Assembly (NCBI RefSeq): GCF_000143415.4 | Contig: NW_003314452.1 | Span: forward strand, 1 to 64,000 | Length of the DNA stretch: 64,000 nt | From: Selaginella moellendorffii | Taxonomy: Eukaryota; Plantae; Lycopodiophyta | Reading direction: 5' to 3' | Shown: piece after piece, positions 1 to 35,675 of the stretch | How the letters are laid out: each line of letters begins with the position of its first letter | Numbering within the stretch: the first letter of the stretch is position 1 | Program-made: the position numbers and the translations under genes | The notes under the pieces: model-generated | Seen by the model: the letters and a program-made list of their open reading frames with translations, nothing else | The model's database searches: none | What the model was told of the DNA's origin: nothing

Positions 1-34
1 AAAATTAGGAAATATGGCCAAAACGATTTTAAAT

Positions 35-360
35 ATATAGTAGGGATGGGCGTGGTTGACCAACCTGAAACATCATCTAACTTCTTATTAGGCATGTTTA
101 TTTTTGTTTTATGTTTGGCTTAAGTTTAAGCCCAAACTTTGTACTATATTAGCTGGTGGAATATCTTTATGTTAGGCCACCATTATGCTAAAATAGTCCT
201 TTAGCTCCATTTTATGTGATAGTTTTGATATTGGAATGCTAAAAGCTCTATTCCTTATTCCTTATTTGTTCTTATTCCTTTGTTCATTAGCTTTATATAT
301 ACTCAAGAGTTTTGTTCATCCCTTTGTTTAGTGGCCAAGGCCCTAAAACTTAGGTGCCAC
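35..360 (+). mobile_element. Old AT-eroded LTR fragment related to the 13559 LTR family (also about 24855-25180 and 48643-48950)
   Basis: Shares atagtagggat, gaccaacct, taagcccaa, agctggtgga, gttaggccacc and gtggcc(c)aaggccct in order with LTR 14167-14555. Confidence 0.8.
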
Positions 361-1118
361 TCTATTGCCATTAGCACATATATATATAAGCTTTTAAATT
401 TGGATTTCTCATAATGTCACTAACCCCAATACTATTTAAACTTAAGGACAATATTTTAAAACCCTTAACTGATTAAAAAAAAGGGGTGCACTTTTATTTA
501 TCCCTTTATATTTGAACTCTATAGATCAATGTCTCAAATCATTCCCTTTGGTTGTTTATAATTCATTATATTTCTCTATACAGTTGCAACTCTTTTGAAA
601 CTGTACAAGTCAAGCCCAACTGGAATAAATTAGACTTGCCAAATGTTAATCTCAACACATGGTATGATTCCTCTAGCTAACTAAATGTCAAACCCGAGAC
701 CCTTTTAATACCAAATGTAAGCTCCTAAATTCAAATTTTTTGGGATGTCGCCCAATTTAGTTTATTCAAACCCAAGAACACTTAACCCCAAGTATTCCAA
801 GACCTCTAACTGATTAAAAAAAAGGTTGCACTTTTATTTATAGGCCTTTCCCCTTATATTTGAACCTCATATATCATCTCTCGAATCAATTAGAAACTAA
901 CACACGAATCAATTAGAAACTAACTTGAGACCTTCAATCCCCAAGAAGGCTCATGCAAGTGGTCGTGAGTAAGGATAAACTTGATATTACTAGAATACTC
1001 CAAGTTGTGAGAAAATAAATGTGCATTGGTGATAAACTGGAATACAATAGAGAAGTGCTAACTTTCCCCCTTAACTACTCTTACATGGTGGCAACTACCA
1101 TTTCTTCATGAGTCATGA

Positions 1119-1555
1119 NNNNNNNNNNNNNNNNNNNNNNNNNNNNNNNNNNNNNNNNNNNNNNNNNNNNNNNNNNNNNNNNNNNNNNNNNNNNNNNNNN
1201 NNNNNNNNNNNNNNNNNNNNNNNNNNNNNNNNNNNNNNNNNNNNNNNNNNNNNNNNNNNNNNNNNNNNNNNNNNNNNNNNNNNNNNNNNNNNNNNNNNNN
1301 NNNNNNNNNNNNNNNNNNNNNNNNNNNNNNNNNNNNNNNNNNNNNNNNNNNNNNNNNNNNNNNNNNNNNNNNNNNNNNNNNNNNNNNNNNNNNNNNNNNN
1401 NNNNNNNNNNNNNNNNNNNNNNNNNNNNNNNNNNNNNNNNNNNNNNNNNNNNNNNNNNNNNNNNNNNNNNNNNNNNNNNNNNNNNNNNNNNNNNNNNNNN
1501 NNNNNNNNNNNNNNNNNNNNNNNNNNNNNNNNNNNNNNNNNNNNNNNNNNNNNNN
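1119..1555. other. Assembly gap (N run)
   Basis: 437 Ns. The paralogous interval is about 1.1 kb in copy 2 and about 1.3 kb in copy 3. Confidence 1.
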
Positions 1556-2660
1556 TCTGTGAAGTGGCCTCTTGCTTGTCCACAGTGGGCTTCTTCGAAT
1601 AGATCTTGAGTTCTTCAAATTGTACACATCTTCATAGTACATTGTCTCGTCCTTTTTTGTACAATCTTCCTCCCACAACTGAATATGGTCTTGTCCTTAA
1701 GACAAATTATTTATGGTGATTAGAGATGGAGTATCGACTTAGTATTATTGTTGTTATGAGGTAGTAGTAGATGTCATTCGTCCATGTTGATGATGTGTGG
1801 ATGCAAAGTATGTTGGAGTCAGGAAAGTCATCCATGTTGTATTTTAGTTGTTCACTAGTTATAAAGTTGGCTTATACATGTTGTTTGCCAGGTTTGTGAA
1901 TAATCTCGAAGTTGTATTCTTGAAGTAATAAGAACTATCAGGAAATTCTACGGATGAAGATGGTCTTGTTGAGGAGGTGTAAAAGTGCTTTGTGGTCAAC
2001 CATGCTCTTGACTTTAGTGCCAAGTAGGTAGTGTCGAAACTTTTATAGTGCATAGACCATTCCTAAAACTTCTTTTTCAATGGTGGTGTAGTTCATCTCA
2101 GCTGAGTTGAGTCTTCGGCTTGTATAGTAGATTGGTCGGTCTTTGAGGTCTTTTGTGAGAAAGTATTGCTCTGATGGCATAATCAAAGGCATCAATGTGT
2201 ATTGAAGTTTTTGTCCTAGTTTGGTTGGGTGAGTATTGGAGCCCTTGTTAAGGAATTCTTGAGCATGTCGAATGCTTGTTGGCAATCTTGAGTCTAGTTG
2301 TAGATGTGATTTTTCTTCAAAAGATCTATAAGGGGTTTTGCAATCTTCACATAATCTTTGATGAAGCGTTGATGGTATCTCATTTTGCCGAGGAAGGATC
2401 GTAGTTTAGTGGTGTTTGTTGGGTGTTGCATGTTGATGATGGCAAGAGTCTTAGCTTTGTCAATGAAGATGCCTTTTTGCAGATGATGTGTCCAAGTAGG
2501 ATGCCAGATTTGACGAAGAAGGTAGATTTGTCAGGGTTTAAGGTGATGTTGTTCTCTTGACATTTGATGAAGCATTTCTCAAGGTGTTGGGGATGTTATT
2601 TTTTGCTGCTAAAGATGCTGAAGTCATCCATAAAAACTCACATGAAGTTGGTGAGGTAAT
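1556..2660 (-). mobile_element. Degenerate Ty3/Gypsy pol relic (RT-RNase H-integrase), copy 1
   Basis: Minus-strand VFMDDFS (RT) and SAEMNYTTIEKE (RNase H) motifs with many stops and frameshifts. Confidence 0.85.
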
Positions 2661-2835
2661 ATAGTGCTTTCAATCTTTATTCTACTCTTTCTAGACGCTT
2701 ACCATGACTCTTCTATTCTAAACAAGTATATTGTACATTATCATGTGACTAAGAAGCTACACATGTCTTTTTATTAGTCAAAGATGTGATATGATATTAT
2801 TCGATATATATATATAGCTATGTTTAATGCCAAAT

Positions 2836-3075
2836 CCTAATGCCAAGATTAACACACAAAACGGAGCTAAACAGAGCCAAATAAAGTTTAGTGCTATTTT
2901 AGCATATCAGTGGCTTAACACAAAGATATGGGTACTCCACTAGCTAATATGGTATAGAACTTGGGTTAAACCGAATGCAAAATAAAAATAGGTATGCAAA
3001 CAGAAGCTAGAGTATGCCTTAGGTTAATTGGCCATGCCTGACATACCCACAATCCCTACTACACATTTGGAACCT
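2836..3075 (-). mobile_element. Old LTR fragment of the 13559 family, inverted (longer versions at about 29040-29455 and 53000-53455)
   Basis: tatgggtactccactagc, aacttggg, tatgccttaggtt, ggccatgcc and atccctacta are the reverse complement of LTR 14165-14400. Confidence 0.8.
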
Positions 3076-4797
3076 CGGAAAACATGCTTTAAGTTATCAC
3101 CCTTAATACCAAGAGTTAGTATTTGGAATAAGCTTGAAACTTATTTAGTGAATATTAAAGAACCAAGCTCAATATAATGGGGGTTACATATGAGCTTCTC
3201 ATACTGAGTCAAGTATGCTCAGCATAAAACATATAAGAGTTCCTATATTATGTTTATCTAGTATAAGTACATACATGATGACCAGTTTCTCAATTAGCTT
3301 GGGTGGAGATTGATAAAGAGTCTAGCAATACCAACCTCTTGCTGTCGTGGCAGTAAAGAAAAAATATCTGAAATGACTCATTCATAGGTAATTTTCGATA
3401 CCTACAATCATATTCCCAACATTCATTAGGTTAATCCTCTAAAAATTGTGCATATAAAATAGCTGAAATACTTCATACAAAGGGATCATAAATAACTAGC
3501 TTCTATAGATCCACTAGTTCCTCCACCTAATATTCCTCCAAATCCCTATCAACCAAACAATTATAACTACTTTCCTTCCTTCCAAAAGGAGAGGATGATA
3601 TAAGGTTCAAGTGTATGGTTACAATGCCATTTATATTATTACCGTAATGGGATTTTGATAGCCATTGAATTGGTTTCAATTTAGATCACTAATAATTGAA
3701 TATACATATTTAGCTAATTGAATATGCATATTTTTATATTTTATGTCCATATTTCATGCACTTACAGATTTTCTTTTTATTTTGCTTTACAGAGTAAAGT
3801 CATATACCTAGATATCTAAATATATTCTTGGATATTCTCTAATCTAAGGGCTCTTAAACTTTCTCTAATTAACTTGTAATCAGTGTTTAAAGTTAATTGT
3901 CTAACTTATCACTAATGTAAATAATCTATATTGAAAAACTATTAACACTTATTAACACTAACATGTAACAGAATGCCAATTTAAACCTTAAAAATAAATT
4001 TAAAATTAACATCATTAAGCCCTCCACACTCATGGTTTCATTCTGTAATATAGAGGGCACAAAATCCAGCCATCTAAGATTGATGGCCTGATGGTTAAAC
4101 ACAAAAGAACTTAAGAGAGTTAAACATTGTTCTAGCTATTTAAAAACTAAAGACTAGTGGGGACACCATTTCTCACCATTTGTCCTGAAGTGCAATAGCT
4201 AGCAATTAACATTATGCAAATTCCTCAATCTAAACAAGTGCCTAGCCTCATTAGTTGTTATGTTTAGCATTCAAGTATGTTAAGAAATATATTAGAATAT
4301 ACATTGTGATATATTTTAGATAGCACAAAAAATAATTTAAAAAGAGGAGTAGTGTATTTTAAATAGTACAAAAAATTATTTAAAAAGAGTAGTACTCAAT
4401 GGAATTTAAGGATTGGTTCCTCGAGGTATAGAAGATAGACAGATAAAATTGATGGATCAATTCCTCTCTCTCTCTCTCTCTCTCTCTCCATTTGTTTGTT
4501 TCTTTCTATGATTTTGCAGAGTCCTCAAAAAAAGGTACTTGGCATTGAGGTTCCACCATAGGCAAAAAGAAACTCTGTTGATCTTTTATAGGGAAACGTT
4601 TTCCTACAGGCCTTTCTGAATTGAATCCACGGAACCTGGAAGTCAAAACAAGAGAGTAGCTTCAGAACACTTAAAAGCTCACCCCTGCAAGTTCTGTTGT
4701 GGTGAGTGAATGGTCAAAGGTGCGAATATTCTCTCTACAAAAATTTGAATAAGTTTTTCTACATTTCCATGGAATACGAGTCATTTTTTAGGGTATC

Positions 4798-5293
4798 ATG
4801 AAGAAAACACTCATTCTTGATCTAGACAATCCACTGGTATACGCTCATAAGGATCTCGTCTCTTCTGTAGATGTCAGCATGGAATTTGACGATGATGCAC
4901 CACTCCACATCATGAAGAGATTAGGTGTAGATGAATTTCTGGGGAAGGTTTCAAATGTGTACGATATCGTGGTGTTTAGTGCCGCCCAGGAGAAGTATGT
5001 CAACCTTGTGGTTGACCATCTGGATCCTACTCGGAGGCTTGTGTAGAGGAGGCTACATGGTGGCAATTGTGTTGTTCTAAAGGACGGGATGAAAGTCAAG
5101 AATCTTGACCATGTAGGGTTTCGGGATTTCAAGCGGGACTTCTTGGCAGATGTAGCCCCTTTCCTTCTTGCCCTGCCAAAGTGTGTGGACTTTACTGAAG
5201 TTACCCATCGCTGGAATATTGGACAATGTGGAGAAGCAAGGCAAATTGTACATCCCAGATCCATTCGATGATGAATGGGTTGTGTTTAACTGA
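4798..5293 (+). pseudogene. SCP/FCP1-like (NIF) phosphatase pseudogene A, copy 1
   Basis: Paralogue of the 195-aa gene. DLDNT changed to DLDNP, TAG at 5044-5046, a 90-bp in-frame deletion removing the VVALDD motif, and a 2-bp deletion (588-90-2=496 bp). Confidence 0.93.
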
Positions 5294-5508
5294 CTATTGT
5301 ATTTTGTAATATATGTTATAATTTTCCCCCCAATAGTTTATGGAAGTGACTTTTGAGGATTTCCTGCATGTCTTGTGTAAAACAAAATGGTAAAACAAGC
5401 CAAAAGAACACCAAGTTTTCAAGCTCTTCTGCTTCAAAAGTGTATCATCCTAGTAATGAGCTCACAACTTTTGCTTGACCGAGCCTGAAAGAGATTGGAA
5501 AAAAAGAG

Positions 5509-5725
5509 CTACCTCCTGGTACTTGATACATTAGGCAAACATGAAGGCAAAGAAGACCGGGAAGCCGACCAAGACACCCGCAACAACACCCAAATGTCAT
5601 GTCGTAGCCAAAGTAACTCTCCACAAACGCCTTGACAGTCATGTATCACACATTGGGTGTCATGAGGCGCACAAGATCATTTGCATACTGGGATGCGATC
5701 CAGCCATACAAATCCAATAGTGATC
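5509..5725 (-). pseudogene. PDR-type ABCG transporter C-terminal fragment, copy 1
   Basis: Across frameshifts it reads LYGWIASQY...TVKAFVESYFGY / LGVVAGVLVGFPVFFAFMFA*CIKY..RR*, matching the plant PDR terminus as I recall it (YGLxASQ...FxxxYFGY...FAxxIKxLNFQRR). Confidence 0.75.
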
Positions 5726-7221
5726 CACATTCTTGGAAAGTCCAAGAAAAAGCAAAAAGCTGTTTATATCCAACTTAGGTTTGGTGGTCAACACTAAACC
5801 AAAAACAATGAAGATGAATAGGACGATGTTATTGTCCCTGCCCTACAAGTATTTTTACGTGTTTTCGTTTGCAGCAGAGGAACCGCGGTACTGAATATCC
5901 ACATTCTGGTATTGAAATTAAGCTGGTCACTTGAGCGATTAGTTTTTAGCTGATCAAAACGGTTGTAATGTACAATGTTTAAATCGTGATTTTCATTTGT
6001 GAATACTTTAGTGTTCTTAATTTGGATTTTCTTTACATTTCGCTTTATAGGTATAAAGAATATACCTAAATATCTAAGTATATTCTAGAATATTCTCTAA
6101 TCTAGCAACTTTAAAGTTTTCATATAAAAAACTATGAAGTTCTTTATTTTGCCTCATATCTAGAACTGGAAGAGTATCAAGTAAAATTTGAAAAACTATA
6201 TAAAACTGAGAAACTCTATATTATCCTATAAATTACAAGGATTAACACTGACAAAGAGTCTAAAATTAACATCATTAATCTAGAGGGCACAAAATCCAAC
6301 TTCTGGACGTGTTTTAAGATTGATGTCATGATGGTTAAACACTAAACAACTTAAAAGAGTTAAAGTTTGTTCTAGCTATTTGAAAACTTGCCTCAATCTA
6401 ACCAAGCACCTAGCTTCATTATTTGTTATTCTTTGCATTCAAGTATGCAAAGAAATCAGTGGAATTTAACGATTGGTTCCTCAAGGTATGAAAAAAACAA
6501 TGGCTAGCATATTAACATTAATATTCAATACTATTCAAATGCCTCAATCTAAGGAAGCACCTTCATTATTTGTTATTCTTCACATTCACGTATGCTAAGA
6601 AGTCAGTGGAATTTAACAATTGGTTTGGAAGAAACAAGAAACCTGGATCAATTCATCTCTCTCTCTCTCTCTCCATTTGACTCTTTCTTTCTATAATTTT
6701 GCAGACTCGTCAAAAAGGTACTCGGCATTCCTGTAGGAAAACGTTTCCCTGTAAAAAGGTCAACAGGTCAAAGGTGCGAATATTCTCTCTACAAAAATCA
6801 ACAATCCCGCCATTTTCTTCATCGCATCTCCCGAGAATTGGGATAGCTCTCCAGCTTCCACTCGATCTCTGCCCACTTGAGGTGAGATGCATGGACCCTA
6901 CAAGAAGCCAGCCGTGGACACCACGCTGTTGCATCTCCCGTCAATGTGCTGTTTACCAATCCTGTTCCTTGAACCGAACCTGACTACAAGAATGTCGGAA
7001 GCCCTTGAGTTGTTCAGCAACCTTGATCGAGAACAACTCGGCCTGGCAGAAATGCAATGAACTGGCAACGAATTCATATTTCTGAATCGAAATCAGCATG
7101 CTGAAAAAGACCAAGACTACAAAGATGACAAAAAGGAGCAAGTAAATCTAAACAACTACAACGATCAGCTGCAAACAGACATGTTAGAAGCCAAGCAGAG
7201 AATCAGAGTAATGAAAGAAAC

Positions 7222-8580
7222 TCACCAAACAGATTGCCAGGCAGGATCGCAGAGGATGTCGCGCGCGGATGGACGCTGGTCGCGTCTTGCTGCGACCAGC
7301 TCCAACACCTTGGGCGCAATTGATGGGTGTTGGTACGCCCAGTCTGCTGGTAAAACGCCATCCCGGACGTCAATCAATACCGACTCCCTTTCCTACACAG
7401 ATTCACCGAACTAAGCAAGCACGTTGCACAAACTGCAGCCAAACCTGGTCCGGGGGACACCTCCAATGAAGTTCGAAGAGTATAACTCCAAGCGCAAGCA
7501 TGTCAGTGTAGGTTGAGTTGCTCCGGCGCTGGGGAGAGTAGTAAACTGCTCTCCCCTTCTTGATATTTTCGGTCTCGAGCATGGACTCCTTATTTTTAGC
7601 TGTAAGCCAACAAATGAGAGATGGAAGAGATGTTTCATTTGCCTACCAAGACCGAAATCTCCCAGCTTGATGCGTCCATCGTCTGTGACGAAGATGTTGT
7701 GTGGTGCTATATCCCGATGAACACCCACGTTGTCGTGCACATGCGCCACAGCTTGAAGAAGCTGCCTAAACGCATCTGCAGGTGGTGACTCACCGCCGAG
7801 GAGCACCGACTGGAGCGAGCGGCCACAAAACTCCATGACAATGTACACTTTCGACTTGCCCGGCTCGCCTTCCTCCTTCCACATGTCGAAGTATTCGACT
7901 ATGTTGGGGTGTTCGCAGCGCTGGAGCATCTCTCCCTCCTTGAAGACGAGCGCGACATCCTGGTCTCTGGACTTCGTTGCTGTGCGAACCTTGATGACTT
8001 TGATGGCGTAGATTTGTTCGTCCTCCTTGCTACGGCACTTGTATACTTTCCCGGACGCCCCCTGGCCAACACAAGCGAGCACTTCGTAGCTGCTGCAGAA
8101 GCGGCCTGGACAAGAGAGACAAGGGGCCACTCAGAAGCGAAAAGATGCCAAAGAGACAAATTATTGTATCCACCTGCTGCTGCAACTGGAGTCTCCCCTC
8201 CCTTTTGGATCGATTCCACGATCCCGGTCACAACATTCGCCGAGAGCATCTTGAATCTCTCCAAGCGTTGCGCCATTGCGAGGAATTGCCGAACATATTC
8301 TGCAAGTCATGAATCAAACCAGCAAAGAGTCGTGTCAGCCAACAAAAGGAATTCCTCGTACCAGCGTCAGGAGCAGCCTGCAACGCGGATGCATCATGAT
8401 CAGTTTCTCCTGCTCCTGCTTCAACGAGGATCTTCATCAGACAAGTGCAGATGTTTCAAGTTTTGACCAACCTGATCGAGCTCGGTTAATCGGATCCAGT
8501 GGGCGGGTCCTTTCGAGCATGACGTCGGATCGCTTCTGAGTGTGTAGTTTCTTCGGACCAGCAGCTCTCTTCCTCTCCAT
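7222..8580 (-). CDS. Spliced Ser/Thr kinase, stand-alone GCN2/eIF2alpha-kinase-like domain, about 357 aa (intact copy)
   Basis: Manual GT-AG model with coding exons 8580-8472, 8415-8362, 8299-8174, 8105-7647, 7599-7445 and 7392-7222 (1074 nt, open frame, introns 47-68 nt). Motifs GQGASG, YAIK, HPNIVEYFDMW, VYIVMEFC, FRQLLQAVAHVH, HRDIAPHNIF, IKLGDFGLAK, YYSPQ, DMLALGVILFEL, ERESVL..G.LP..W and RPSARDIL. Probable 5' UTR exon ending at donor 8783/8782. Confidence 0.85.
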
Positions 8581-9000
8581 GGTGGACTCTGGTCAGTGTT
8601 AACATTGTGAGTCGTTGCTGAAAGCACAAAAGAGATTGAGGAGTCGTTACTGCACTTATCCAACGGCTGGAGCCTAGAATGCGCACATCAGCTGTCCGTC
8701 AATGGATTCACAACAAACTTGCTACAATTGCATGCTCCTTCCGCCTCGCCAACAGTAGGCCGCAAACCAGCAGCGCACTCACCTCTGCCCTTGCCAGACG
8801 ATCACGGCAGCCCTAGATTTGGAATCTAAGCTGCATTGAGGATCGACGCGCTCCTCCGGCTCCCTTGGGCTTTGCCAATAGTAGGGTACAAGAATACAAA
8901 AGGCCAAGTCGGATAGAGTTTAGGGCAGACGTGGCACCTTTGGTCACCTTTTGTGGCCCTTCTTCACTTCCACGGAATACGAGTCATTTTTTAGGGTATC

Positions 9001-9581
9001 ATGAAGAAGACACTCATTCTCGATCTAGACAATACACTGGTATACGCTCATAAGGATCTCGTCTCTTCTGTAGATTTCAGCATGGAATTCAATGATGATG
9101 CACCACTCCACATCATGAAGAGACCAGGCGTAGATGAATTTCTGGGGAAGGTTTCAAAAGTGTACGATATCGTAGTGCCGCCCAGGAGAAGTATGTCAAC
9201 CTTGTGGTTGACCATCTGGATCCTACTGGGGGGCTTGTGTCGAGGAGGCTACATGGTGGCAATTGCGTTGTTCTAAAGGACGGGACGAAAGTCAAGAATC
9301 TTGACCATGTAGGGTTTCGGGATTTCAAGCGGGTGGTGGCACTGGATGACATTATTGACTTCTACCAAGGTCATCAAGAGAGCGTGGTGGTGGCTCCAAA
9401 GTTTGAGGGGTCAAAGGATGACCACTTCTTGGCAGATGTAACCCCGTTCCTTCTTGCGCTGTCAAAGTGTGTGGATTTTACCAAAGTTACCCATCGCTGG
9501 AATATTGGACAATGTGTGGAGAAGCAAGGCAAATTGTACGTCCTAGATCCATTCGATGATGAATGGGTTGTTTTAAACTGA
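9001..9581 (+). pseudogene. SCP/FCP1-like phosphatase B, copy 1, frameshifted
   Basis: 7-bp deletion (tggtgtt) at about 9172 relative to copies 2 and 3 (581 vs 588 bp) splits the ORF. Confidence 0.9.
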
Positions 9582-9991
9582 TTATTGTATTTTGTAATAA
9601 ATGTTATAATTTTTCTGCCAAAGTGTAGTTTATGCAAATGAATCTTAGTGAACTTTTGAGCTTAGGATTTCCTACATGTCTCATGTAAAACAAAATGGCA
9701 AAACAAGAAAAACAGCACACCAAATTTTCAAGCTCTTTTGCCAAGGAAATCCCCTTTACATTGAGAGCCCACAGCTTTGCAACACCCCATGAACACCAAT
9801 AGGAGCACGTGCCCACCTCAAACAACAAGCGAGACTTCAAAAAGGACATCACTGATCCAACATTTGATGCCGGAGGATAAGATGCTTAGAAGACTGATTG
9901 CTTCTGAGTTCTTTTATGTCTGTTGTTTAGTGCCTATGTGAAGCTATTGACAAAAATGTGATGATCCATATGAAGCTCTTCACAGGATCAT

Positions 9992-9992
<1 letters not shown>

Positions 9993-10026
<34 letters not shown>
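9993..10026 (+). repeat. (GA)n microsatellite upstream of the PPR; (CT)n tracts also at about 4464-4488 and 6657-6673 and in the paralogues
   Basis: Directly visible; length differs among copies. Confidence 0.95.
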
Positions 10027-10160
10027 AAGTGTCTTTGGCATGACATCCAGCGAAGTAGCAAGAGGAGTGATCGCGGTGCCTCCTGCAGGCATCTCCACGC
10101 CAAATCGCGACTCTTCTGCACCAATGTGGTGATTCCAAGTCCCTCCCACGAGGGAAGCTC

Positions 10161-11007
10161 TTGCACCGCCGCCTGGCCGCCACCCTCGACCTACGCCACC
10201 ACCCCTTGTTCAGCAATCTCCTCATCCTCATGTATGGCAAGTGCTCCAGCCTCCCGGACGCATGGTCCGTCTTCCACGATCTCGTCCACAAGAACGCCTT
10301 CTCCTGTAACATCATGATCTCGACGCTCTGCGCAAACGGCCAGAGCGCGCAAGCGATTCATCTCTTCCTCGCCCTCGCCAGCGATTCAGTCGTCCGCCCC
10401 ACCCACGTCTCGTTCGTCGCCGCGCTCGCCGCCTGCGCCAATTGCCCCGATCTCCAGTCGGGCATCCGGATCCACGCCCAGATCGTCGCCGCGCCACCCG
10501 CGATCGCGAGCAATCCAGTCGTGTGCTGCGCCCTCTTAACCATGTATGGGAAATGCGGCAGCCTGGCAGACGCGCGGAAGGTCTTTGATGACATGCCGCG
10601 CAAGACGATAGTCGCCTGGAGTGCGATGCTGGCTGCTTGCACCAGAAATCCCGATCAGGGCGGGCTCCCCGCTGCGATCGAGCTCTATCGCCAGCTCGGG
10701 GATGCCGGCATCGGTGCGGACTGGAACACTGCGATTGCCGCAAATGCCCATAATGGGCAGTTTAGAGCGGCGATTGCGCTGCTGTGGAAGTTGGATCTGG
10801 AAGGGATCGGGCCTGATATGGTGACGCTGACTGAGATCCTGGCAGCGTGTTCTTGGAAGCAGGATAAAGCACAGGGTATAAAGATCCACGGAGCGTACTT
10901 GCTCGTGTGGCTGGGAGCGTAATGTTGTCGCTGGAACCTCTATCGTCAACATGTATGGAAAGTGTGGCAGAATCAAGGAAGCATCAAGGAAGGAAGCAAG
11001 AATCTAA
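10161..11007 (+). pseudogene. Truncated PLS-class PPR gene, copy 1 (frameshift)
   Basis: MYGKCSSLPDAWSVF and MYGKCGSLADARKVFDDMP motifs; extra G at about 10890; ends mid-motif with no E or DYW domain. Confidence 0.85.
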
Positions 11008-13558
11008 AATTATTTTTTGTTTATCATGGCCTTTATAAAAAAAATTAAAATATTTTTCTTTTCATAATTTATATACCTTTATTTATATGTTGTTATATTC
11101 CATGTAGTTTCAATTTGAACCATTTGCTTTTGTATATAAATTAGAATTTTTGGGATAATTGATATACACATTTTATGTATTCCCTATCCATATTCCATGC
11201 ACTCACATTATTTTATATTTTGTGCACTCACATTGGTGGAGGTGAGGGGCACCTTTGATTATTCTTGAAAAGTGGTTAGATTTGAGATTTTGGTTTAGAT
11301 TTAGCTTTTGCATTGTCTAAATTTAGCTTTTTCCATTTTTTTCTTTTATTCTTTCCTTTTGGCATTTTGGTTTAGATCTAGCTTTTGCATTATTTATATC
11401 TCCCTTTCCTTCTAGCTTTTTTTATTTCATTTCTTTTGCTCTTTCTTTTTCATTCATCTTTATGGTAGAGCAGTAGTCTCTTCCTCCTTTAACTTTGGAA
11501 TAGCATTTTGTACAATTGCTTAATGTTATGTGATTGTAGTTGAACAACCAAACTCAGTTGATGGCAGTATTCATAACACATGGTACAACTCTTATTGCTC
11601 TTGGTGCCAATTCTTATGTTCAACTAGAGTTCTTTTATGGGAATCTTTAGGGACAATGTATACTATTGGTTCAATCACTTCATAGTGATTGCCATATATC
11701 ATTCTTGGGATGATACTCGATGTTTGTGTGAGTTTCCCACATGTTTCCAAGGGATGGCATTGTAGTGGTATAATGGTTTGAATGTAGCTATTCGTGGGGA
11801 TTAGAGTATTCTTCAAGACGTCTTCAAACACACATTTGGATATGTCAACAATTGTGATGATACTTTCCAACAATTGCATCGTCTTTGTTAAGGACCATCT
11901 AAATTGGTGATGCAATTTAGCATTTGTTTTCATAGCCTTTTGCTTCATGCGGAGCCAAATATGTTGGAGCGGATCAAACTAGGAATGTTGTGGCCAACAC
12001 TTCGTCAAAGTTTTATAGGACTTGTGCATGCACTTGCTCGAACGACCTCTAACAATGCTTTTTGTTTGGCACAACATTATGAGACATTGCCTTTTCCACT
12101 TCTCGCTACACATCTTTTAGCTCCACTTTCTGTGGGAGATGGTATTGTTTCAATGGAGGTTGATGTTACTACTGCTCAGGTTTAAGGACAAGGGTGAGGA
12201 TGTGATCATAGTTGTGATATTCGCTACTGAGCATGTAATGAAGTTGGTCACATTTATCAGTATTGTCAGCGTTTTCCGAATTGGTAGCTTCTATTTCTTG
12301 GGTGGAGACTTTAGCATCAACAATGTCTTGTTGGTATTGTTGCAGTGAAAGGTCTAGACATCGAGATGCATCCAGGAAATGAGGAGTCGTGTGAGTAATG
12401 GAGGGACCTTGCACGAATAAGTCAATGACCCCTTTATCTTTCTTTTGGAAGTATCATCAAAAGGTTCATTCGGCATCAGTTCATCTAGTGTTTGCTTTCC
12501 AAGCTTATTTTTATAACAAAAGGTCTTTTATTATTCTCTTTGTATTGATTCATACATGTTCAAGTTTATCTTCTATTGCTCGACTTGTTGCCATATGTTA
12601 CCACCTATATTTGTGTCATGCAGCAGAGTCAGTTTTCATTCTTTATGGCAATGGCCATACATATGCATATGCACGGGATGAAGTGAATTTAGTTGTGTAT
12701 ATAGGTGATCTTGAACTTGGACTGCAGTCATTGCCAGTGGTGTCGAGTTAAGCTTTTGACTTCATCCTTGGTATGGGCACAATCATGCTAAATGTGACTT
12801 TGAGGCTTCTTCCCCTTGTCTCATACTTCCTTATATTTTATCCATTCCTTTCATTTCGAAACATGTTTGTCCCTTTGCTTCTACTTCTACTTTCATTACT
12901 TTTGTCTCCCTATTATTTCCTTTTATATTTCCGTTTTATTCTGCTTTTCCCTTTTTCAATACCTCGGTTGACAAGCTCATGAAGGAGTATGCCAATCTCT
13001 TTGAGTTTCACCTATCGTCTGGGGCCAAGATTGCTATATGTCATCTGATTCCAACCAGGGATACTCATCCCATCAAAGTTTTTGTTCATCATCAATCACC
13101 CAAAGAGATCAAGATTTTACATGCAAACGTCAAGGAAATGTTGGAAAAGGGTGCTATTCAAAAGTCACGGAGTCCTTGGGCATATGAACCTCATCTTGTG
13201 ACGAAGCCTAATGCGAGTATTCATTTCTACATCGATTATCATTCGTTAAACAAAATGACGATTTTAGATGTGTATCCTCTTCCTCACCTATTGATTTCTT
13301 AGATCATCTAAAAAGAAGTTGTTAGTTCACTAAGTTAGATCTTGCTTCTGGGTAATGGCAAATACTAATGGGCGAAGAAGATATTCCTAAGAATACTTTT
13401 TATACACCATTTAGTTTGTATGAGGTTTTGGTGATTCTGTTTGGTTTGAATAATGCTTTAGCATTTTTCTAACAAATGATGGATGGGGTTCTTTGTGATA
13501 TGTTAAAGGTGATTACTTACTTCATTAGTGATGTTTTGATCCACTCGAAGGGGATATG

Positions 13559-14706
13559 TGTCGCGAATATGACTTCAGGTATCGAAAGTTACCTGTCAGC
13601 TAGTCCTTTCTGATATTCTCACCTTACTGCCACGACAGCAGGAGGTCGGTATTGCTGGACCTTTTATCAGTCCCTCTTGTGCTAGTGGAGTTAACTGGGC
13701 ATTTCGAGTGTACTTAGACCAGATGAGCATAAGGACGGAATTCCTACGTGTTATTAGCTAAGCATACTTAGCCCGGTAAGGAGTTCCCATCTCGTTTTGT
13801 CTTGCACTTGCTAGTGACAAGAACCCTCGCGTATTGAGATTAGTCCCTCAATATCGCTATATGATAGCTTACCGTGTCTGCCAAACACCCTCGCTATCAT
13901 GCCCTTTGTGTTAGTCTCATTTCGGTCCCAAATGCTATTTATGGAAAGTGTTTAGATTCGCTCATTTGGCATATCTACGGAATGTAGAGATCGGCCCGAA
14001 CACAATGGTGTTCGTCCCGTGTCCAAATTCACAATCTAGGGACATTCCATATTTAGTAAGTTTCGAGTTTGTCCCAGAGACTAACTCCTAATACTAAGGG
14101 AGGCTTGGGGTGAAAGCCCAAAGCGTGTGTTCCTCAAGGGGGGGGGGGGCTATGGGGGGTTCCAAATGTATAGTAGGGATAGTGGGTAGGTCGGGCATGG
14201 CCGACCAACCTAAGGCATAGTCTAGCTCCCGCTTGCATGCCTGTCCTTGTTCTGCGTCCGGCTTGGGTCTAAGCCCAAGTTCCATTCCATGCTAGCTGGT
14301 GGAGTACCCATACTCTCACGTTAGGCCACCGGTATGCCAAAATAGCGCCAGGCTCCGTTTGGCTCCGTTTTGCGTGCTGGTCCTGGCATTGGGATGCTGG
14401 TTGCTCTAGGACTGTTCCAAGTCACTCCGGGCCCCTGTCCCTTCGCTCCTTGGGCTATATGCTCGAGAGTTGCTCCGTGGTCCGGTTCCATCACCCCTTG
14501 GTGTCACGCTTGGGAGTTTGGCATCATTCCTTCGTTCAGTGGCCCAAGGCCCTGAACCTCGAGTTCCTGTGGACACGTGGCATGGACACGTGGCATGTGA
14601 CACATGGCATCTGTCACGTGGCACAAAGAGGGTTTAGGTTCCGCTTCGTGGTGTTATCCTATGGTAAATCACCATAGGATAAAGGGTCAAAACCACGTGC
14701 GCTACA
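13559..14706 (+). repeat. 5' LTR (1148 bp)
   Basis: TG...CA ends with a 6/7 terminal inverted repeat; direct repeat at 19715. Confidence 0.93.
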
Positions 14707-14708
14707 TT

Positions 14709-14719
14709 TGGTATCAGAG
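14709..14719 (+). promoter_or_regulatory. Primer binding site (tRNA-iMet)
   Basis: TGGTATCAGAG 2 nt after the LTR end. Confidence 0.93.
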
Positions 14720-17700
14720 AATGAGTCTCAGCGAGTACTATTCAATGAGATTGGGCAACTAGTCTCGTTGCATACGCAGAGATGAAAACGATGATCCGAG
14801 TGGGTACACGTTTGGGTGCAAAGACTTCGCATTGGTTCCTTGGGTATGGATTTGGTTACCTTCTTGTACCGTAATTATGTGAGCTTGCTCTTAGGCTCAT
14901 AAGATGGATTTGAATTGTTCCAATAGCATGAGTTTGCTCTTGGGCTCATGAGTGAGGCACATTAGCAACTCAAGGTTGCACTTTGAGTTGGTAGGATTAA
15001 TGTTAGCCTATTGGTGGTTCCATGAGTGGTTCCAGTGGTTCCATGAGTTATTCCTTGTACCATGGGTGAAAGCAAACCTACCTAGGTTTGCTATGAGTGG
15101 CAAATAGGCTGGTCCGTAGCTGTTTAGCACGGCACTAGTGGATCCTTCCTAGGCATGATTATAATTGGATCAATCAAGATTGTAGGGAATAGTCTATTGG
15201 TTCAAGTAATCATTGCCGTGCTCTCTCATAAACTTTTCTTGGATTGAACTGAAGGCAGTGCGAAAGCAAGCTTGAGGTTTGGTCAAAGATGAAACCGAAA
15301 AGAGAGTCATCGAGGACGGAGGATCAAATACGTAAATCATCTTCTCTTCTTGGAGAGATGATTTGCAACGAGGTGTTAACTCATTGCTTGTGTTCACATC
15401 ATGCAATCAAGAGTCCCTACCTTGATGCATGTTGGAAGTGATGGTCTTACAAGTGGTGAGTTATGGGATGGATAGTGGTGAAACACTAAACCATTTTGTC
15501 TAGGCTCGATATTGGAAGACTTGGGTTGCAATGCTCAATTCTTTTCCGGGGAACCTTGCTATTGCTCCTTGAGTAGCTTAGTGTTGGATTAGTGTTGAGT
15601 TTGGTCGGAAAGAGAGTGGCATGAGCTTGTCCGTGTTGTAAACAAAAGTTAGCGATGTTGGGTGTTGTAAATCTCTATTGGTGGAGTGTGGCATTTATGT
15701 TGCATTTTGTCGAATTGAGTTGGCACTTGATACTCACATAAACTTTTGAAGTAATGACATAAGCATTGCTCATTGCGTTACTCAATTGATGATCAAGTCA
15801 TTATGATGCTTATATCATATCCATGTGATAAAGAGTAATGCGTTTACAAAGTTGCTTGGATAAACGATGATCAACCCCCAACTTGGTTGATGGAGAAGCT
15901 AGTCTACTTGCATGTAGTAGCATTGTAGTAGCTTTGACTGGATTCTCTATAGTGGTCAATTATGCTAAGCTTAAGTTGGTTCCTTGTTTCCTTGAGTTGG
16001 CCCATAAGGTGTTGGAAAGGGTTGTAGCATTCATTTGCTATACCTTGTCGGTTGATCCGTTAGCACTTGGAGTAGATTGTTGGATGGAGAAAATGTGGAG
16101 TTGGGGCATTGACGTCACTAGCACTTGTGTTAGTGGAAGTGGCATTGTTATTTCAAGTGATGAGGAATTTTCCTTAGACCTTGATTTTTCATGTCATTTT
16201 TCTTGTTAGTGTTTTGGCTTCACATTGGATCTTGAAGGTGATTGAAGAAGAGTGTTAGTGCAATATGGATATCCGAAGATGTGGTCTTCGTGATCAAGCC
16301 TTGGATGTTCATTTTGCACTTTACGGATGTCGGTGTTGGATATCGGAAAAATGGGCAAAGATGTTCGATGCTTAAGCATATTGATGGATCATGAGAATTT
16401 GTGTTGAGGTGAACCTATGTGAAGTTGTAGGTAGGAGGAAGTTGGTTGAGTCTTGAAAGTTTGCAATCCTGGACTGAGAGTCATTCTTTCTCTAGGATGG
16501 GAAATTTTCCACAAATTTTCTTAGACTTCTCCAATGGCTGATCTGTTGGTCACTTTGCTCAAAAACCATTCCGTTTTTGTAAGCCAGTACAAACTAGTGA
16601 AGGGGTTGAGTTGACTTCAGTTAACTTAGACCTTGATAGGTAGTTTGTATAATGCGGCCCGAAAGGGATGTTGACTTTTGAGGCTAAAACAATTGAGTTG
16701 GATAGAGTCTAGAGTTGATATCGAAAAGTGGCCGTTGCACTTTTCTCAGAAAGGTGACCCTTGTACCTTTCTTTTGTAGCGTTATGCTTGGTGGCAGGTT
16801 GCATCTTGCATTATGTTAGACTCTATGAGAGTAGTGAGCTCTCACTGATCTTGACTTGGTCTTGGTGGCCATGCGCCTTGGCTGAGGATGGTGATGTCCA
16901 ATTTAGTTGTTTGAGGTTGCGATGTTGGTACCCGTACTATAGCTTTGTCTATGAGGAGGTTGTGTACCAATATGAGTCCATCTCATGGTCTTCACTTTAG
17001 TTTCGACTGAGTGTTGATCATGCATAGCTAGCCTCTTTAAGGCATGTTCAGAGCTATTGACTAAATGCATTAGTGAGCTTATTGCGGTTGAGTTGGATTC
17101 GAGTGGTCATTTAGTTTGTGCTTGTCTATGAACTTTTATCTCGTACCTAGGGTATTATGTTCATGTTGGACAAGTATGTGACTCGATGATATGAGTTGGT
17201 GTTTGGGTCTTGTGAACGCAAGTTGAAGAGTGATTGTTAGTTACTTTGCGACTAGTGATTACTTGTAGACTTCATCAAGGACAGTTGACATTTGCTTTGT
17301 TCGATGATGATTTAGCAGTGATGGGCTTGCTTTACCGGATGGTGTTGCAGAGGATCGTGTCGTTAGACTTGCATAGGTTTTCTATGTTAGTATATCGATT
17401 CTATCTTTGTCGATATCATTTGGTTACGTTTAGTCCGTGGTGTTGGATTTCATTGAGTCTTGGATGTGGTGATTCACTCTTTGATGAAATGTTAATATCT
17501 ATAACTGAGTATTGCTGAAGGATTGGTCTCGGATACTAAGTATAGTATCTTCAACTTTGGTTAGCTTGGTTGCTGGAAAGCTCCGAGTGGTGATTCACTC
17601 TTGCTTTCTTCTAGCTTTGTCCTGATGTTGATGGCATTGAAGTGATGCCTTGTCATTGATATTGTTGATATTGAGATCTGAGTGAAATGAGATATCCTTC

Positions 17701-19714: not shown

Positions 19715-20677
19715 TGTCGCGAATATGACTTCAGGTATCGAAAGTTACCTGTCGGCTAGTCCTTTCGGATATTCTCACCTTACTGCCACGACGGCAGGAG
19801 GTCGGTATTGCTGGACCCTTTATCAGTCCCTCTTGTGCTAGTGGAGTTAACTGGGCATTTCGAGTGTACTTAGACCAGACGAGCATAAGGACGGAATTCC
19901 TACGTGTTATTAGCTAAGCATACTTAGCCCGGTAAGGAGTTCCCATCTCGTTTTGTCTTGCACTTGCTAGTGACAAGAACCCTCGCGTATTGAGATTAGT
20001 CCCTCAATATCGCTACATGATAGCTTACCGTGTCTGCCAAACACCCTCACTATCATGCCCTTTGTGTTAGTCTCATTTCGGTCCCAAATGCTATTTATGG
20101 AAAGTGTTTAGATTCGCTCATTTGGCATATCTACGGAATGTAGAGATTGGCCCGAACACAATGGTGTTCGTCCCGTGTCCAAATTCACAATCTAGGGACA
20201 TTCCATATTTAGTAAGTTTCGAGTTTGTCCCAGAGACTAACTCCTAATACTAAGGGAGGCTTGGGGTGAAAGCCCAAAGCGTGTGTTCCTCAAGGGGGGG
20301 GGGGCTGTGGGGGTTCCAAATGTATAGTAGGGATAGTGGGTAGGTTGGGCATGGCCGACCAACCTAAGGCATAGTCTAGCTCTCGCTTGCGTGCCTGTCC
20401 TTGTTCTGCGTCCGGCTTGGGTCTAAGCCCAAGTTCCATTCCATGCTAGCTGGTGGAGTACCCATACTCTCACGTTAGGCCACCGGTATGCCAAAATAGC
20501 ACCAGACTCCGTTTGGCTCCGTTTTGCGTGCTAGTCCTGGCATTGGGATGCTGGTTGCTCTAGGACTGTTCCAAGTCACTCCGGGCCCCTGTCCCTTCGC
20601 TCCTTGGGCTATATGCTCGGGAGTTGCTCCGTGGTCCGGTTCCATCACCCCTTGGTGTCACGCTTGGGAGTTTGGCA
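19715..20677 (+). repeat. 3' LTR lacking its last 183 bp
   Basis: Matches 13559-14523 with roughly 15 substitutions counted by eye. Confidence 0.92.
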
Positions 20678-23600: not shown

Positions 23601-23964
23601 ATATAGTTAGAAATACAATAATAATATTAAATAAATTTTCTCTAAATTATAAATAAATTATAAGAAAATATGTCTCTGATATATTATTTTTTAATTATAG
23701 TTAATTACTTGGATCCCTTGGAAATGATGAACTTGAAAAGATTACACAATAGCTAGTGCAAAATTAGTTTTATAATCTTGTAGTAGAGTAACTAATAGAG
23801 CAACAATAGTATGCATAGCAGTTTTAGTTTACTTTAGAAAATATAGTGTAAAGCATATACCTAAAATATTTAATATATAATAAAATATTCCTTATTCTAA
23901 GGGTTATAATTTCTTGCTGTAAAACTTTTCTATAATTCATTTTTATCAAGATTTAATTCTAATA

Positions 23965-28165: not shown

Positions 28166-28344
28166 TATAGTGCTTTCAATCTTTATTCTACTCTTTCTTC
28201 ACGCTTACCATGACTCTTTTATTCTAAACAAGTATATTGTACATTATCATGTGACTAAGAAGCTACACATGTCTTTTTTTTAGTCAAAGATGTGATATGA
28301 TATTATTCAATATATATATATATATATATGTTTAATGCCAAACT

Positions 28345-30964: not shown

Positions 30965-31179
30965 TTATTGTATTTTGTAATATATGTTATAATTTTCCCC
31001 CCAATAGTTTATGGAAGTGACTTTCGAGGATTTCCTGCATGTCTTGTGTAAAACAAAATGGTAAAACAAGCCAAAAGAACACCAAGTTTTCAAGCTCTTC
31101 TGCTTCAAAAGTGTATCATCCTAGTAATGAGCTCACAACTTTTGCTTGACCGAGCCTGAAAGAGATTGGAAAAAAAGAG

Positions 31180-35643: not shown

Positions 35644-35675
<32 letters not shown>

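What the first reader, a model, noticed from the sequence alone, without database searches (positions are those of the whole stretch)
7222..9581. Head-to-head GCN2-like kinase and SCP-type phosphatase: candidate writer/eraser or poison-antidote module
Seen: a kinase and a DxDxT phosphatase are divergently oriented with ATGs about 420 bp apart (8580 and 9001), and the pair is amplified as a unit amid transposon debris. Established: these are opposing enzyme classes, and GCN2 activity inhibits translation initiation through eIF2alpha. Inference: a co-regulated two-gene switch, possibly a toxic kinase restrained by its partner. I know of no described plant module of this kind. Caveat: the known eIF2alpha phosphatases are PP1-type, not HAD-type, so the shared substrate is unknown.
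Basis: partly seen in the sequence, partly recalled or inferred. Interest (0 to 1): 0.85.

Follow-up and report, generated by a model that had tools for sequence, protein, structure and literature searches.

The report
Linked kinase and phosphatase gene pair
In the spikemoss Selaginella moellendorffii an expressed, unusual eIF2-alpha-kinase-like gene lies head-to-head with a small SCP-type phosphatase gene inside a 25-kb repeat; the pairing is old, but the phosphatase is almost silent and nothing shows a switch or poison-antidote system.

Summary
The genome is Selaginella moellendorffii, and RefSeq already annotates both genes ("eIF2-alpha kinase-like", "probable phosphatase PSR2").

**In this window**
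- The window holds three tandem units of about 24-25 kb, each with the pair plus an extra phosphatase pseudogene.
- No unit has both genes intact:
  - Unit 1 (the finding): kinase intact, phosphatase has a 7-bp frameshift.
  - Unit 2: kinase has a nonsense codon.
  - Unit 3: the kinase core is deleted.
- Across all 13 copies read, counting 10 from the older assembly, 7 have both genes intact.

**Expression**
- RNA-seq shows a strongly expressed, spliced kinase. Its transcript start is about 130 bp from the phosphatase ATG.
- The phosphatase ORF has zero reads in three of four runs.
- Recent phosphatase copies vary as fast as intergenic DNA.

**In favour of a real link**
- The only kinase paralogue (39% identity, same odd HRDIAP catalytic loop) also has a phosphatase of the same Selaginella-specific clade about 650 bp upstream.

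**Verdict**
- The two genes are anciently linked neighbours, recently amplified.
- Co-regulation was not observed, poison-antidote is unsupported, and eIF2-alpha as substrate is untested.

The scan noted the same pair earlier in unit 2 of this window (s1-358639).

The parts
1..24820 (.). Tandem unit 1 of an approximately 24-25 kb segmental repeat
   Evidence: Self-BLAST and repeat families: 95-100% identity to units 2 and 3
24821..48608 (.). Tandem unit 2. It carries a unit-specific Ty3/gypsy insertion at about 42450-48049 and a MITE-like insertion at 36289-36730
48609..64000 (.). Tandem unit 3, cut off by the end of the window
7112..8870 (-). Unit 1 kinase transcription unit. The ends are projected from the RNA-seq ends seen on unit 2 (32752 and 34509-34515). 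It has 5'UTR introns at about 8589-8650/8655 and 8673-8738
   Evidence: (joints, begin/end places), with the unit 1/unit 2 offset
7165..8580 (-). Unit 1 kinase CDS, intact, 357 aa. Coding introns lie at about 7169-7225, 7392-7443, 7600-7646, 8105-8172, 8300-8361 and 8415-8470 (three are ambiguous by 1 nt). It is a PEK-like kinase-domain-only protein with HRDIAPHN, KGR and SPQ in place of HRDLKPxN, KGT and SPE
8871..9000 (.). About 130 bp between the kinase transcript 5' end and the phosphatase ATG. This is a candidate bidirectional promoter, active only towards the kinase in the libraries examined
9001..9581 (+). Unit 1 phosphatase copy (NIF/SCP type, intronless). It is a pseudogene: a 7-bp deletion between 9173 and 9174 shifts the frame after 'YDIVV' and removes motif II
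4798..5290 (+). Second phosphatase copy of unit 1, with no kinase partner. It is a pseudogene with an in-frame stop and an approximately 90-bp deletion that removes motif IV (DD)
32752..34515 (-). Unit 2 kinase transcription unit, the stretch on which reads were laid. The CDS has a nonsense codon (Q59 to stop) at 33926-33928
34645..35232 (+). Unit 2 phosphatase: intact 195-aa ORF with DLDNT, VFSAA, K..KNL and LDD motifs
30469..30961 (+). Extra phosphatase pseudogene copy of unit 2
57987..58516 (-). Unit 3 kinase remnant. An 820-bp deletion (equivalent to unit 1 positions 7309-8128, junction at about 58065-58068) removes the kinase core
58931..59518 (+). Unit 3 phosphatase: intact 195-aa ORF
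55570..56062 (+). Extra phosphatase pseudogene copy of unit 3

Best explanation
This is an old gene neighbourhood that was recently multiplied, not a demonstrated two-gene switch.

**Shown**
- A Selaginella-specific kinase-domain-only protein lies head-to-head with an intronless SCP/NIF-type HAD phosphatase gene. The kinase is closest to the eIF2-alpha-kinase (PEK) group but has an atypical active site.
- The cassette sits in a tandem segmental repeat of about 24-25 kb, with at least 13 sequenced copies 98.8-99.7% identical.
- The kinase is the active partner. It is abundantly transcribed and correctly spliced, and its coding sequence varies about 4 times less than the DNA around the phosphatase.
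- The phosphatase copies are silent or nearly silent in the sampled RNA.
- Individual copies of either gene have been disabled: 3 of 13 kinases and 3 of 13 phosphatases. All three units of this window have one partner broken.

**Inferred**
- The pair descends from an ancestral kinase-phosphatase neighbourhood that duplicated as a block. The paralogous kinase has a paralogous phosphatase upstream, and the phosphatase tree splits into two lineages, each with a kinase-linked member, as block duplication predicts. Adjacency persisted mainly because less than 1 kb separates the genes.
- The recent phosphatase copies drift close to the neutral rate; their variant density matches intergenic DNA, but the test against neutrality has little power.
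- Amplification happened by unequal crossing-over of the 25-kb unit.
- No coupling of the two enzymes on a shared substrate is needed to explain what is seen.
For: **Identity**
- RefSeq S. moellendorffii proteins match at 97-99%.
- Pfam gives Pkinase at 1.9e-41 and NIF at 8.3e-37, with no other domain.

**Tandem units and breaks**
-.
- State of the 13 copies: kinase intact in 10, phosphatase intact in 10, both intact in 7, none of those in this window.

**Expression**
- Kinase depth is about 100-250 (X21) and 20-80 (X22), all from the minus strand, with 8 GT-AG introns.
- The phosphatase bins 34612-35319 have depth 0 in X21, X22 and X1.
- The 14 RNA-like runs hold at most 0.42 of the stretch's words. 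That fits the kinase mRNA alone, which is about 0.37 of the stretch.

**Variation among the 13 copies**
- Phosphatase ORF 0.043 variants per site, against 0.048 for intergenic DNA. pN/pS is 0.60 (17 non-synonymous, 8 synonymous).
- Kinase CDS 0.010 variants per site, pN/pS 0.36.

**Phosphatase paralogues without a kinase**
- P0124, P0123, P0353 and the extra copies in each unit.

**Old block duplication**
- Kinase paralogue P0129/P0275 is 39% identical and shares the HRDIAP loop.
- A NIF gene lies at L007 8717-9355, 646 bp upstream of it, and is 38% identical to this phosphatase.
- The NIF tree is ((P0121,P0124),(P0280,(P0353,P0354))).
Against: - Both kinase lineages keep a phosphatase of the same clade within 650 bp, despite a change of orientation. 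Under plain neutral fractionation that is only moderately likely, so some selection for linkage cannot be excluded.
- The phosphatase family is under long-term purifying selection (NIF7 against P0353: dN/dS 0.14). Seven of 13 cassettes keep both ORFs.
- One run (X10) has short low-depth phosphatase contigs with no intron or intergenic background, so the phosphatase may be expressed under some conditions.
- Only four runs from three studies were laid, and their tissues are unknown.
- Nearly all reads carry the K167 allele (161 of 163), which is not the allele of units 1 and 2. Expression of this window's own copies is therefore barely seen.
Confidence: 0.6

Rival explanations
1. The two genes form a real writer/eraser module. 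They act on a common phosphoprotein, or the phosphatase acts on the kinase itself, and they are kept adjacent by selection. The phosphatase is switched on only under conditions not sampled here.
For: - The linkage recurs at the anciently diverged paralogous locus, within the same two Selaginella-specific clades.
- The kinase transcript start is about 130 bp from the phosphatase ATG.
- All four HAD motifs are intact in the unbroken phosphatase copies.
- The phosphatase family is under long-term purifying selection.
- Low-depth phosphatase contigs occur in run X10.
Against: - There are no phosphatase reads where the kinase is abundant, in three of four runs.
- The recent phosphatase copies vary at the intergenic rate.
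- Orientation differs between the two loci, and a pantothenate-kinase domain lies between phosphatase and kinase domain at the paralogue.
- Each phosphatase lineage also has members far from any kinase.
- No shared substrate is known. The established eIF2-alpha phosphatases are PP1-type (general knowledge).
Confidence: 0.2
2. The roughly 4-5 kb cassette is cargo of a mobile element, for example a Pack-MULE-like element with long terminal inverted repeats. The two genes would then travel and multiply together because they were captured, not because they work together.
For: - In the older assembly the cassette is flanked by inverted-repeat arms of about 0.5 kb (L003 6456-6947 and 11641-12103; also L004 and L005).
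- The block matches the window at 97-98% while the flanks match at about 80%.
- The phosphatase segment alone has been copied and inverted relative to its flank (extra copies; L002).
- Other first-stage notes report NIF domains on DNA transposons in this genome (unchecked).
Against: - The arms are 76-89% alike with gaps and have no clean termini. No target-site duplication was looked for.
- The window's units lack the second arm.
- In the window the amplification is plainly tandem, with a period of about 24-25 kb.
- The kinase is a normal multi-intron, expressed gene, not a captured fragment.
Confidence: 0.1
3. The pair is a selfish poison-antidote element. The kinase is toxic, for instance by shutting down translation, and the neighbouring phosphatase neutralises it. 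That would drive the spread of the pair.
For: Tight linkage, high copy number and lineage restriction are typical of such elements.
Against: - The kinase mRNA is abundant with no detectable phosphatase mRNA.
- Cassettes with an intact kinase and a broken phosphatase persist (unit 1, L009, L014).
- The kinase lacks three residues normally needed for full activity.
- Copy number is explained by tandem duplication of a 25-kb unit that carries other sequence as well.
Confidence: 0.03

Closest known systems
eIF2-alpha kinases (PEK family: HRI, PERK, GCN2, PKR)
   Same: - They are the best PDB matches over the whole kinase domain (HRI 1.1e-29, PERK 6.5e-28, GCN2 2.6e-26).
- The best named hits in the 1.84-billion-protein library are fish and frog PKR-like proteins.
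- The 'W.E' motif after beta-4 and the C-lobe 'ER..VL..VRDG.LP' stretch align with HRI and PERK.
   Different: - There is no sensor or regulatory domain, and only a short beta4-beta5 link.
- The catalytic loop reads HRDIAPHN (Lys replaced by Ala), the 'GT' threonine is Arg, and SPE is SPQ.
- The lead over NEK1, Myt1 and CDPK is only about 10-20 bits.
- The substrate is untested.
Small CTD phosphatases (human SCP1/CTDSP1; yeast Psr1/Psr2; CTDNEP1)
   Same: - It consists of the FCP-homology (NIF) catalytic domain alone.
- DxDxT, the motif II Ser, the motif III Lys and the motif IV DD are all present in the intact copies.
- SCP1 is the best PDB hit at 6.4e-21.
   Different: - It belongs to a Selaginella-specific clade of intronless genes that is well separated from other NIF proteins (224 bits against 127 bits or less).
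- It was not transcribed in most of the libraries examined.
- The substrate is unknown.
Head-to-head gene pairs that share a bidirectional promoter
   Same: The two genes diverge, with 420 bp between the ATGs and about 130 bp between the kinase transcript start and the phosphatase ATG.
   Different: Transcription runs in one direction only in three of the four runs.
Kinase-phosphatase paralogue locus on GL377674.1 (NIF7 followed by a pantothenate-kinase/PEK-like kinase gene)
   Same: The same two Selaginella-specific clades lie side by side and are also locally duplicated, with a period of about 12.9 kb.
   Different: - The genes are in tandem orientation.
- A Fumble (pantothenate kinase) domain is fused to, or lies next to, the kinase.
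- Both genes are 38-39% identical to their counterparts in this window.

Membership tests
eIF2-alpha kinase (PEK) family | The kinase domain is closest in sequence to HRI, PERK, GCN2 and PKR | tested here: met
   The top four of 868 PDB hits are PEK kinases (107-96 bits). The best non-PEK hit, NEK1, scores 95 bits, so the margin is small. The best named library hits are PKR-like. The embedding search was not specific.
eIF2-alpha kinase (PEK) family | Canonical catalytic loop HRDLKPxN and the activation-segment 'GT...SPE' motif | tested here: not met
   The sequence reads HRDIAPHN, KGR and SPQ (alignments). Ala at the Lys position occurs only in the two Selaginella lineages, among about 400 catalytic loops of collected homologues.
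eIF2-alpha kinase (PEK) family | Large insert between beta-4 and beta-5 | tested here: not met
   Only about 10 residues ('KEEGEPGKSK') lie between the 'W.E' motif and beta-5. The HMMER alignments to HRI and GCN2 split at their inserts.
eIF2-alpha kinase (PEK) family | Phosphorylates eIF2-alpha on Ser51, docking through helix alpha-G | not testable with these tools
   The C-lobe stretch around alpha-G aligns with HRI and PERK, but substrate recognition needs an assay.
GCN2 | RWD, pseudokinase, HisRS-like and C-terminal domains flank the kinase domain | tested here: not met
   Pfam finds only Pkinase (residues 104-350 of 358).
FCP/SCP (NIF) HAD phosphatases | Pfam NIF domain scoring above the gathering threshold | tested here: met
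   126.8 bits against a cut-off of 21.8.
FCP/SCP (NIF) HAD phosphatases | Catalytic motifs: DxDxT, motif II Ser/Thr, motif III Lys, motif IV DD/DN | tested here: met
   DLDNT, VFSAA, KVKNL and ALDD are present in units 2 and 3 and are invariant across the Selaginella clade. Motif II is lost in the unit 1 copy, which is the copy in the finding.
Co-regulated bidirectional gene pair | Head-to-head genes less than 1 kb apart | tested here: met
   420 bp between the ATGs, and about 130 bp from the kinase transcript 5' end to the phosphatase ATG.
Co-regulated bidirectional gene pair | Both genes are transcribed together | tested here: not met
   Kinase depth is 100-250 while phosphatase depth is 0 in X21, X22 and X1. 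Only X10 has phosphatase contigs, at depth 2-3. Few samples were examined.
Poison-antidote (toxin-antidote) element | The antidote is always present and expressed where the toxin is | tested here: not met
   Copies with an intact kinase and a broken phosphatase exist (unit 1, L009, L014), and kinase RNA is present without phosphatase RNA. Supply from other copies in trans is not excluded.
Poison-antidote (toxin-antidote) element | The toxin is harmful on its own and is rescued by the partner | not testable with these tools
   This needs expression experiments.
Conserved linked gene pair | Homologues of both genes are adjacent at a diverged locus | tested here: met
   NIF7 lies 646 bp upstream of the paralogous kinase gene on GL377674.1. 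The phosphatase tree splits into two lineages, each with a kinase-linked member. Each phosphatase lineage also has unlinked members. Other species could not be searched.

The most novel reading that the evidence does not exclude
A Selaginella-specific clade of sensor-less, PEK/PKR-like kinases with a re-wired catalytic loop (HRDIAP) has stayed next to a clade of SCP-like phosphatases since before the two loci diverged to about 40% identity. Together they would form a lineage-specific phospho-signalling module, perhaps a second eIF2-alpha-kinase-type stress or antiviral pathway in a land plant. Land plants are thought to have only GCN2 (PMC2504353). Copy number in tandem arrays would be under selection, and the phosphatase would be induced only on demand.
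Probability: 0.12. Interest if true: 0.7.

Novelty: new member of a known kind. Interest (0 to 1): 0.3.

Why it matters
If the two enzymes really worked together, this would be a rare case of a plant kinase and phosphatase kept as a physically linked pair. It would also bear on an old question: whether any land plant has an eIF2-alpha kinase besides GCN2. The 'plant PKR' activity of the 1990s never found a gene (PMC2504353).

As it stands, the result is more modest:
- a lineage-specific, expressed, atypical PEK-like kinase;
- an old neighbourhood with a small phosphatase;
- a clear picture of how a young tandem array breaks one partner or the other in individual copies.

Tried and rejected
- **Giant-virus or horizontal origin.** Rejected. 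The kinase has 8 spliceosomal introns confirmed by RNA-seq, and its only close relative is another Selaginella gene.
- **Transposon cargo.** The older assembly shows inverted-repeat arms around the cassette, but they are diverged, gapped and lack clean ends, and they are absent on one side in the window. Kept only as a minor rival.
- **Kinase next to the closest phosphatase paralogues.** None lies within 10 kb at P0124, P0123 or P0353.
- **Kinase next to the sister plant NIF genes in Asimina.** Only an ordinary lectin receptor kinase is nearby.
- **ESM Atlas search of the kinase.** It returned generic kinase clusters (MAPKK, mos) and did not help with family placement.
- **Scan notes searched by sequence and by words.** Both came back blank.
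- **Papers.** No paper linking Selaginella with an eIF2-alpha kinase was found. Plant kinome papers do list a 'PEK_PEK' class beside 'PEK_GCN2', which I did not follow further.
- **A named kinase phylogeny (PEK against NEK, WEE, CDPK).** Not possible, because PDB sequences cannot be fetched as proteins here.
- **Structure prediction.** Not run, because kinase folds would not separate these families.
- **An earlier reading of mine was corrected.** After I read the window as 'reciprocal decay of every copy'. The 13-copy survey showed 7 cassettes with both ORFs intact.
Full report
**What is in the sequence**

Positions 7222-9581 hold a protein-kinase gene on the minus strand and a NIF/SCP-type HAD phosphatase ORF on the plus strand. 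They are head-to-head, with ATGs at 8580 and 9001. Pfam gives Pkinase (1.9e-41 for the full protein) and NIF (8.3e-37), and nothing else.

The genome is Selaginella moellendorffii. [quoted passage not shown] Both genes are therefore already annotated. No paper on them was found.

**Structure of the window**

The window is three tandem units of about 24-25 kb (1-24820, 24821-48608, 48609 to the end), 95-100% alike.

Each unit carries:
- the kinase;
- the phosphatase next to it;
- a PPR fragment;
- a second phosphatase copy about 4.2 kb away with no kinase. This copy is dead: it has an in-frame stop and an approximately 90-bp deletion that removes motif IV.

Two LTR-retrotransposon insertions are each present in one unit only, and therefore probably arrived after the units duplicated. 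One lies at 13550-20680 in unit 1, with 974-bp LTRs 97.9% alike. The other is a Ty3/gypsy element with gag, protease, RT, RNase H and integrase at about 42450-48049 in unit 2. So 'amplified amid transposon debris' is right, but the amplified unit is a 25-kb segment, not the pair.

**State of the copies**

| Copy | Kinase | Phosphatase |
|---|---|---|
| Unit 1 (the finding) | intact | 7-bp deletion between 9173 and 9174; frame shifts after 'YDIVV', motif II lost |
| Unit 2 | stop at codon 59 (33926-33928) | intact |
| Unit 3 | 820-bp deletion removes the core | intact |

The 7-bp deletion is also present in the older assembly at L009, so it is real. No unit of this window has both genes intact.

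The older assembly holds at least ten more copies of the cassette on six or more scaffolds, 98.8-99.7% identical to the window's copies. Over all 13 copies:
- the kinase is intact in 10;
- the phosphatase is intact in 10;
- both are intact in 7;
- the phosphatase sits head-to-head with the kinase in every copy.

**Expression**

Reads and contigs of four runs were laid on unit 2, positions 32370-35900. Two of them (X21, X22) are raw stranded RNA-seq runs chosen by species label, so they are unbiased with respect to these genes.

Kinase:
- Depth is about 100-250 in X21 and 20-80 in X22, all from the minus strand.
- Six coding introns and two 5'UTR introns are confirmed, all GT-AG on the gene's strand. 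This includes an intron just before the stop codon, so the CDS ends at 7165 in unit 1 rather than 7222.
- The transcript runs from about 34509-34515 to about 32752. Its start is therefore only about 130 bp from the phosphatase ATG.

Phosphatase:
- The ORF bins (34612-35319) have depth 0 in X21, X22 and the contig set X1.
- Only X10 has two short contigs at depth 2-3. One of them carries the 90-bp deletion of the dead extra copies.
- The 14 RNA-like runs hold at most 0.42 of the stretch's words. That fits the kinase mRNA alone, which is about 0.37 of the stretch. This is indirect evidence.

Which copies are expressed:
- 161 of 163 reads carry T at 33536 (Lys167). That is the allele of all ten older-assembly copies, not of units 1 and 2 (Glu167).
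- Only 5 of 178 reads carry the unit 2 stop allele.
- The RNA therefore comes almost wholly from other copies or from the other haplotype.

Caveats: few samples, unknown tissues, and a tool filter against human-like reads. That filter should not affect a gene with no nucleotide similarity to human DNA.

**Recent evolution of the copies**

Among the 13 copies:

| Region | Variants per site | pN/pS |
|---|---|---|
| Phosphatase ORF | 0.043 | 0.60 (17 non-synonymous, 8 synonymous) |
| Intergenic region | 0.048 | n/a |
| Kinase CDS | 0.010 | 0.36 (6 non-synonymous, 5 synonymous) |
| Kinase introns | 0.015 | n/a |

The phosphatase ratio is not clearly below 1. The counts are small, but they fit a constrained kinase and redundant, drifting phosphatase copies.

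**What the kinase is**

- Its best PDB hits over the full domain are HRI, PERK and GCN2 (1e-29 to 1e-25). NEK1, Myt1, CDPK and PKR follow closely.
- In a library of 1.84 billion representatives, the only relative above 36% identity is another S. moellendorffii protein: P0129, or P0275 in a longer gene model (39%). The next named hits are fish and frog PKR-like proteins and bacterial Ser/Thr kinases.
- The glycine loop, the VAIK lysine, the alpha-C glutamate, HRD Asp, Asn and DFG are present.
- The catalytic loop reads HRDIAPHN (Lys replaced by Ala), the 'GT' threonine is Arg, and SPE is SPQ. The paralogue reads HRDIAPKN and SPK.
- Ala at the Lys position is unique to these two lineages among about 400 loops of collected homologues. 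It is therefore an old, retained feature and not recent decay.
- There is no RWD, pseudokinase or HisRS-like domain.

So it is 'PEK-like, kinase domain only', not GCN2. Whether it is catalytically active, and on what substrate, is open.

**What the phosphatase is**

- It is an FCP-homology domain alone. SCP1 is the best PDB hit (6.4e-21), followed by CTDNEP1 and TIM50.
- All four HAD motifs are present in the intact copies.
- It belongs to a Selaginella-specific clade of small intronless NIF genes, well separated from other NIF proteins (224 bits against 127 bits or less).

The result is mixed.
- Against linkage: the nearest phosphatase paralogues are unlinked from any kinase. P0124 (54% identical) lies next to an asparaginase gene. 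P0123 (92%) lies next to PPR and ABC-transporter genes. P0353 lies in a gene-dense region. The extra copies inside each unit also have no kinase.
- For linkage: the only paralogous kinase lineage, on GL377674.1, has a 213-aa NIF gene (NIF7, P0280) 646 bp upstream on the same strand. This phosphatase is 38% identical to the one in this window and has all catalytic motifs. That locus is itself locally duplicated, with a period of about 12.9 kb.
- The NIF tree is ((P0121,P0124),(P0280,(P0353,P0354))), with 99-100% support for the two lineages and 89% for their union, under a long-branch warning. Each of the two kinase lineages is thus paired with one of the two phosphatase lineages, at similar divergence (39% and 38%).
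- The simplest history is an ancestral kinase-phosphatase neighbourhood that duplicated as a block, followed by phosphatase-only copies dispersing from each lineage.
- The phosphatase family is under long-term purifying selection (NIF7 against P0353: dN/dS 0.14 at dS 1.16).

**Weighing the evidence**

- For some functional tie: retention of both genes at both loci, with an orientation change and a pantothenate-kinase (Fumble) domain now between them at the paralogue. I rate this a likelihood ratio of perhaps 5-10.
- Against a co-regulated switch: the absence of phosphatase RNA where the kinase is abundant, the intergenic-level variation of the recent phosphatase copies, and cassettes with an intact kinase and a broken phosphatase.
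- Against poison-antidote: the same points weigh more strongly. In addition, the kinase's active site lacks three normally important residues, which makes a potent toxin less likely.

I therefore put about 0.6 on 'old neighbours, recently amplified, no demonstrated coupling', about 0.2 on a real but conditionally expressed writer/eraser pair, about 0.1 on transposon cargo, and about 0.03 on a selfish poison-antidote element.

**Context**

[quoted passage not shown] Plant kinome papers do list a 'PEK_PEK' class beside 'PEK_GCN2'. An expressed, PKR/HRI-like, sensor-less kinase clade in a lycophyte is a modest curiosity worth an assay, but nothing here shows that it touches eIF2-alpha.

The scan's first readers had flagged the same pair in unit 2 and the kinase alone in units 1 and 2. 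An earlier follow-up had named the genome, which I confirmed independently.

Noticed in passing
L007:10001-12471 (GL377674.1), paralogue locus: The RefSeq model of the paralogous kinase (P0275, 635 aa, named 'wee1-like protein kinase 2') joins a nearly complete pantothenate-kinase (Fumble) domain to the PEK-like kinase domain. A shorter model (P0129) keeps only the last 70 residues of Fumble. It is not known whether this is a real fusion or two merged genes.
   Followed up: partly
window:42450-48049: A Ty3/gypsy LTR retrotransposon has long open gag, protease-RT (578 aa) and RNase H-integrase (496 aa) ORFs. It is present in unit 2 only, so it probably inserted after the units duplicated.
   Followed up: partly
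window:13550-20680: An LTR-element insertion is specific to unit 1. Its direct repeats of 974 bp (13550-14523 and 19707-20677) are 97.9% alike, and it has no ORF of 130 aa or more.
   Followed up: no
window:36289-36730: A MITE-like insertion of about 440-455 bp with 44-nt terminal inverted repeats is present in unit 2 and absent at the matching place in unit 1 (10632-10639).
   Followed up: no
L003:6456-6947 and 11641-12103 (also L004, L005): In the older assembly the cassette, together with a 2OG-Fe(II) oxygenase fragment, is bracketed by diverged inverted-repeat arms of about 0.5 kb (76-89% alike). The window has only the arm on the kinase side (6520-6940 and 32160-32580).
   Followed up: partly
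window:33536, 33928, 34254 (unit 2) and 7896 (unit 1): RNA reads carry almost only the alleles of the older-assembly copies (Lys167: 161 of 163 reads). Glu167 is private to units 1 and 2 of this window. Either this haplotype is nearly silent or the sequenced plants lack it. GL377738.1 (L009, L013) looks like the counterpart of units 1 and 2.
   Followed up: partly
window:34228-34379 (5'UTR of the unit 2 kinase): The 5'UTR is alternatively spliced: donor 34228 joins 34291, 34296 or 34379. A 3-nt acceptor choice at the second coding intron explains RefSeq isoforms X1 and X2 (358 and 357 aa).
   Followed up: no
run X10 (labelled as a different organism, 'organism B'): A run filed under another organism name holds spliced kinase contigs that are nearly identical to this locus (at most 1 difference in 450 nt), plus low-depth phosphatase contigs. 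This could be a mislabelled sample, a mixed sample or a very close relative.
   Followed up: no
window:10161-10922 (and 35800-37200, 60080-61000): A PPR-repeat ORF of 253 aa directly follows the phosphatase in each unit. It is probably a fragment. At L002 the same flank lies in the opposite orientation relative to a phosphatase copy, so the small phosphatase segment has been inverted at least once.
   Followed up: partly
window:1106-1678: A low-complexity stretch gives overlapping ORFs of 156-190 aa on both strands. It interrupts the unit-to-unit alignment, so its length probably varies.
   Followed up: no
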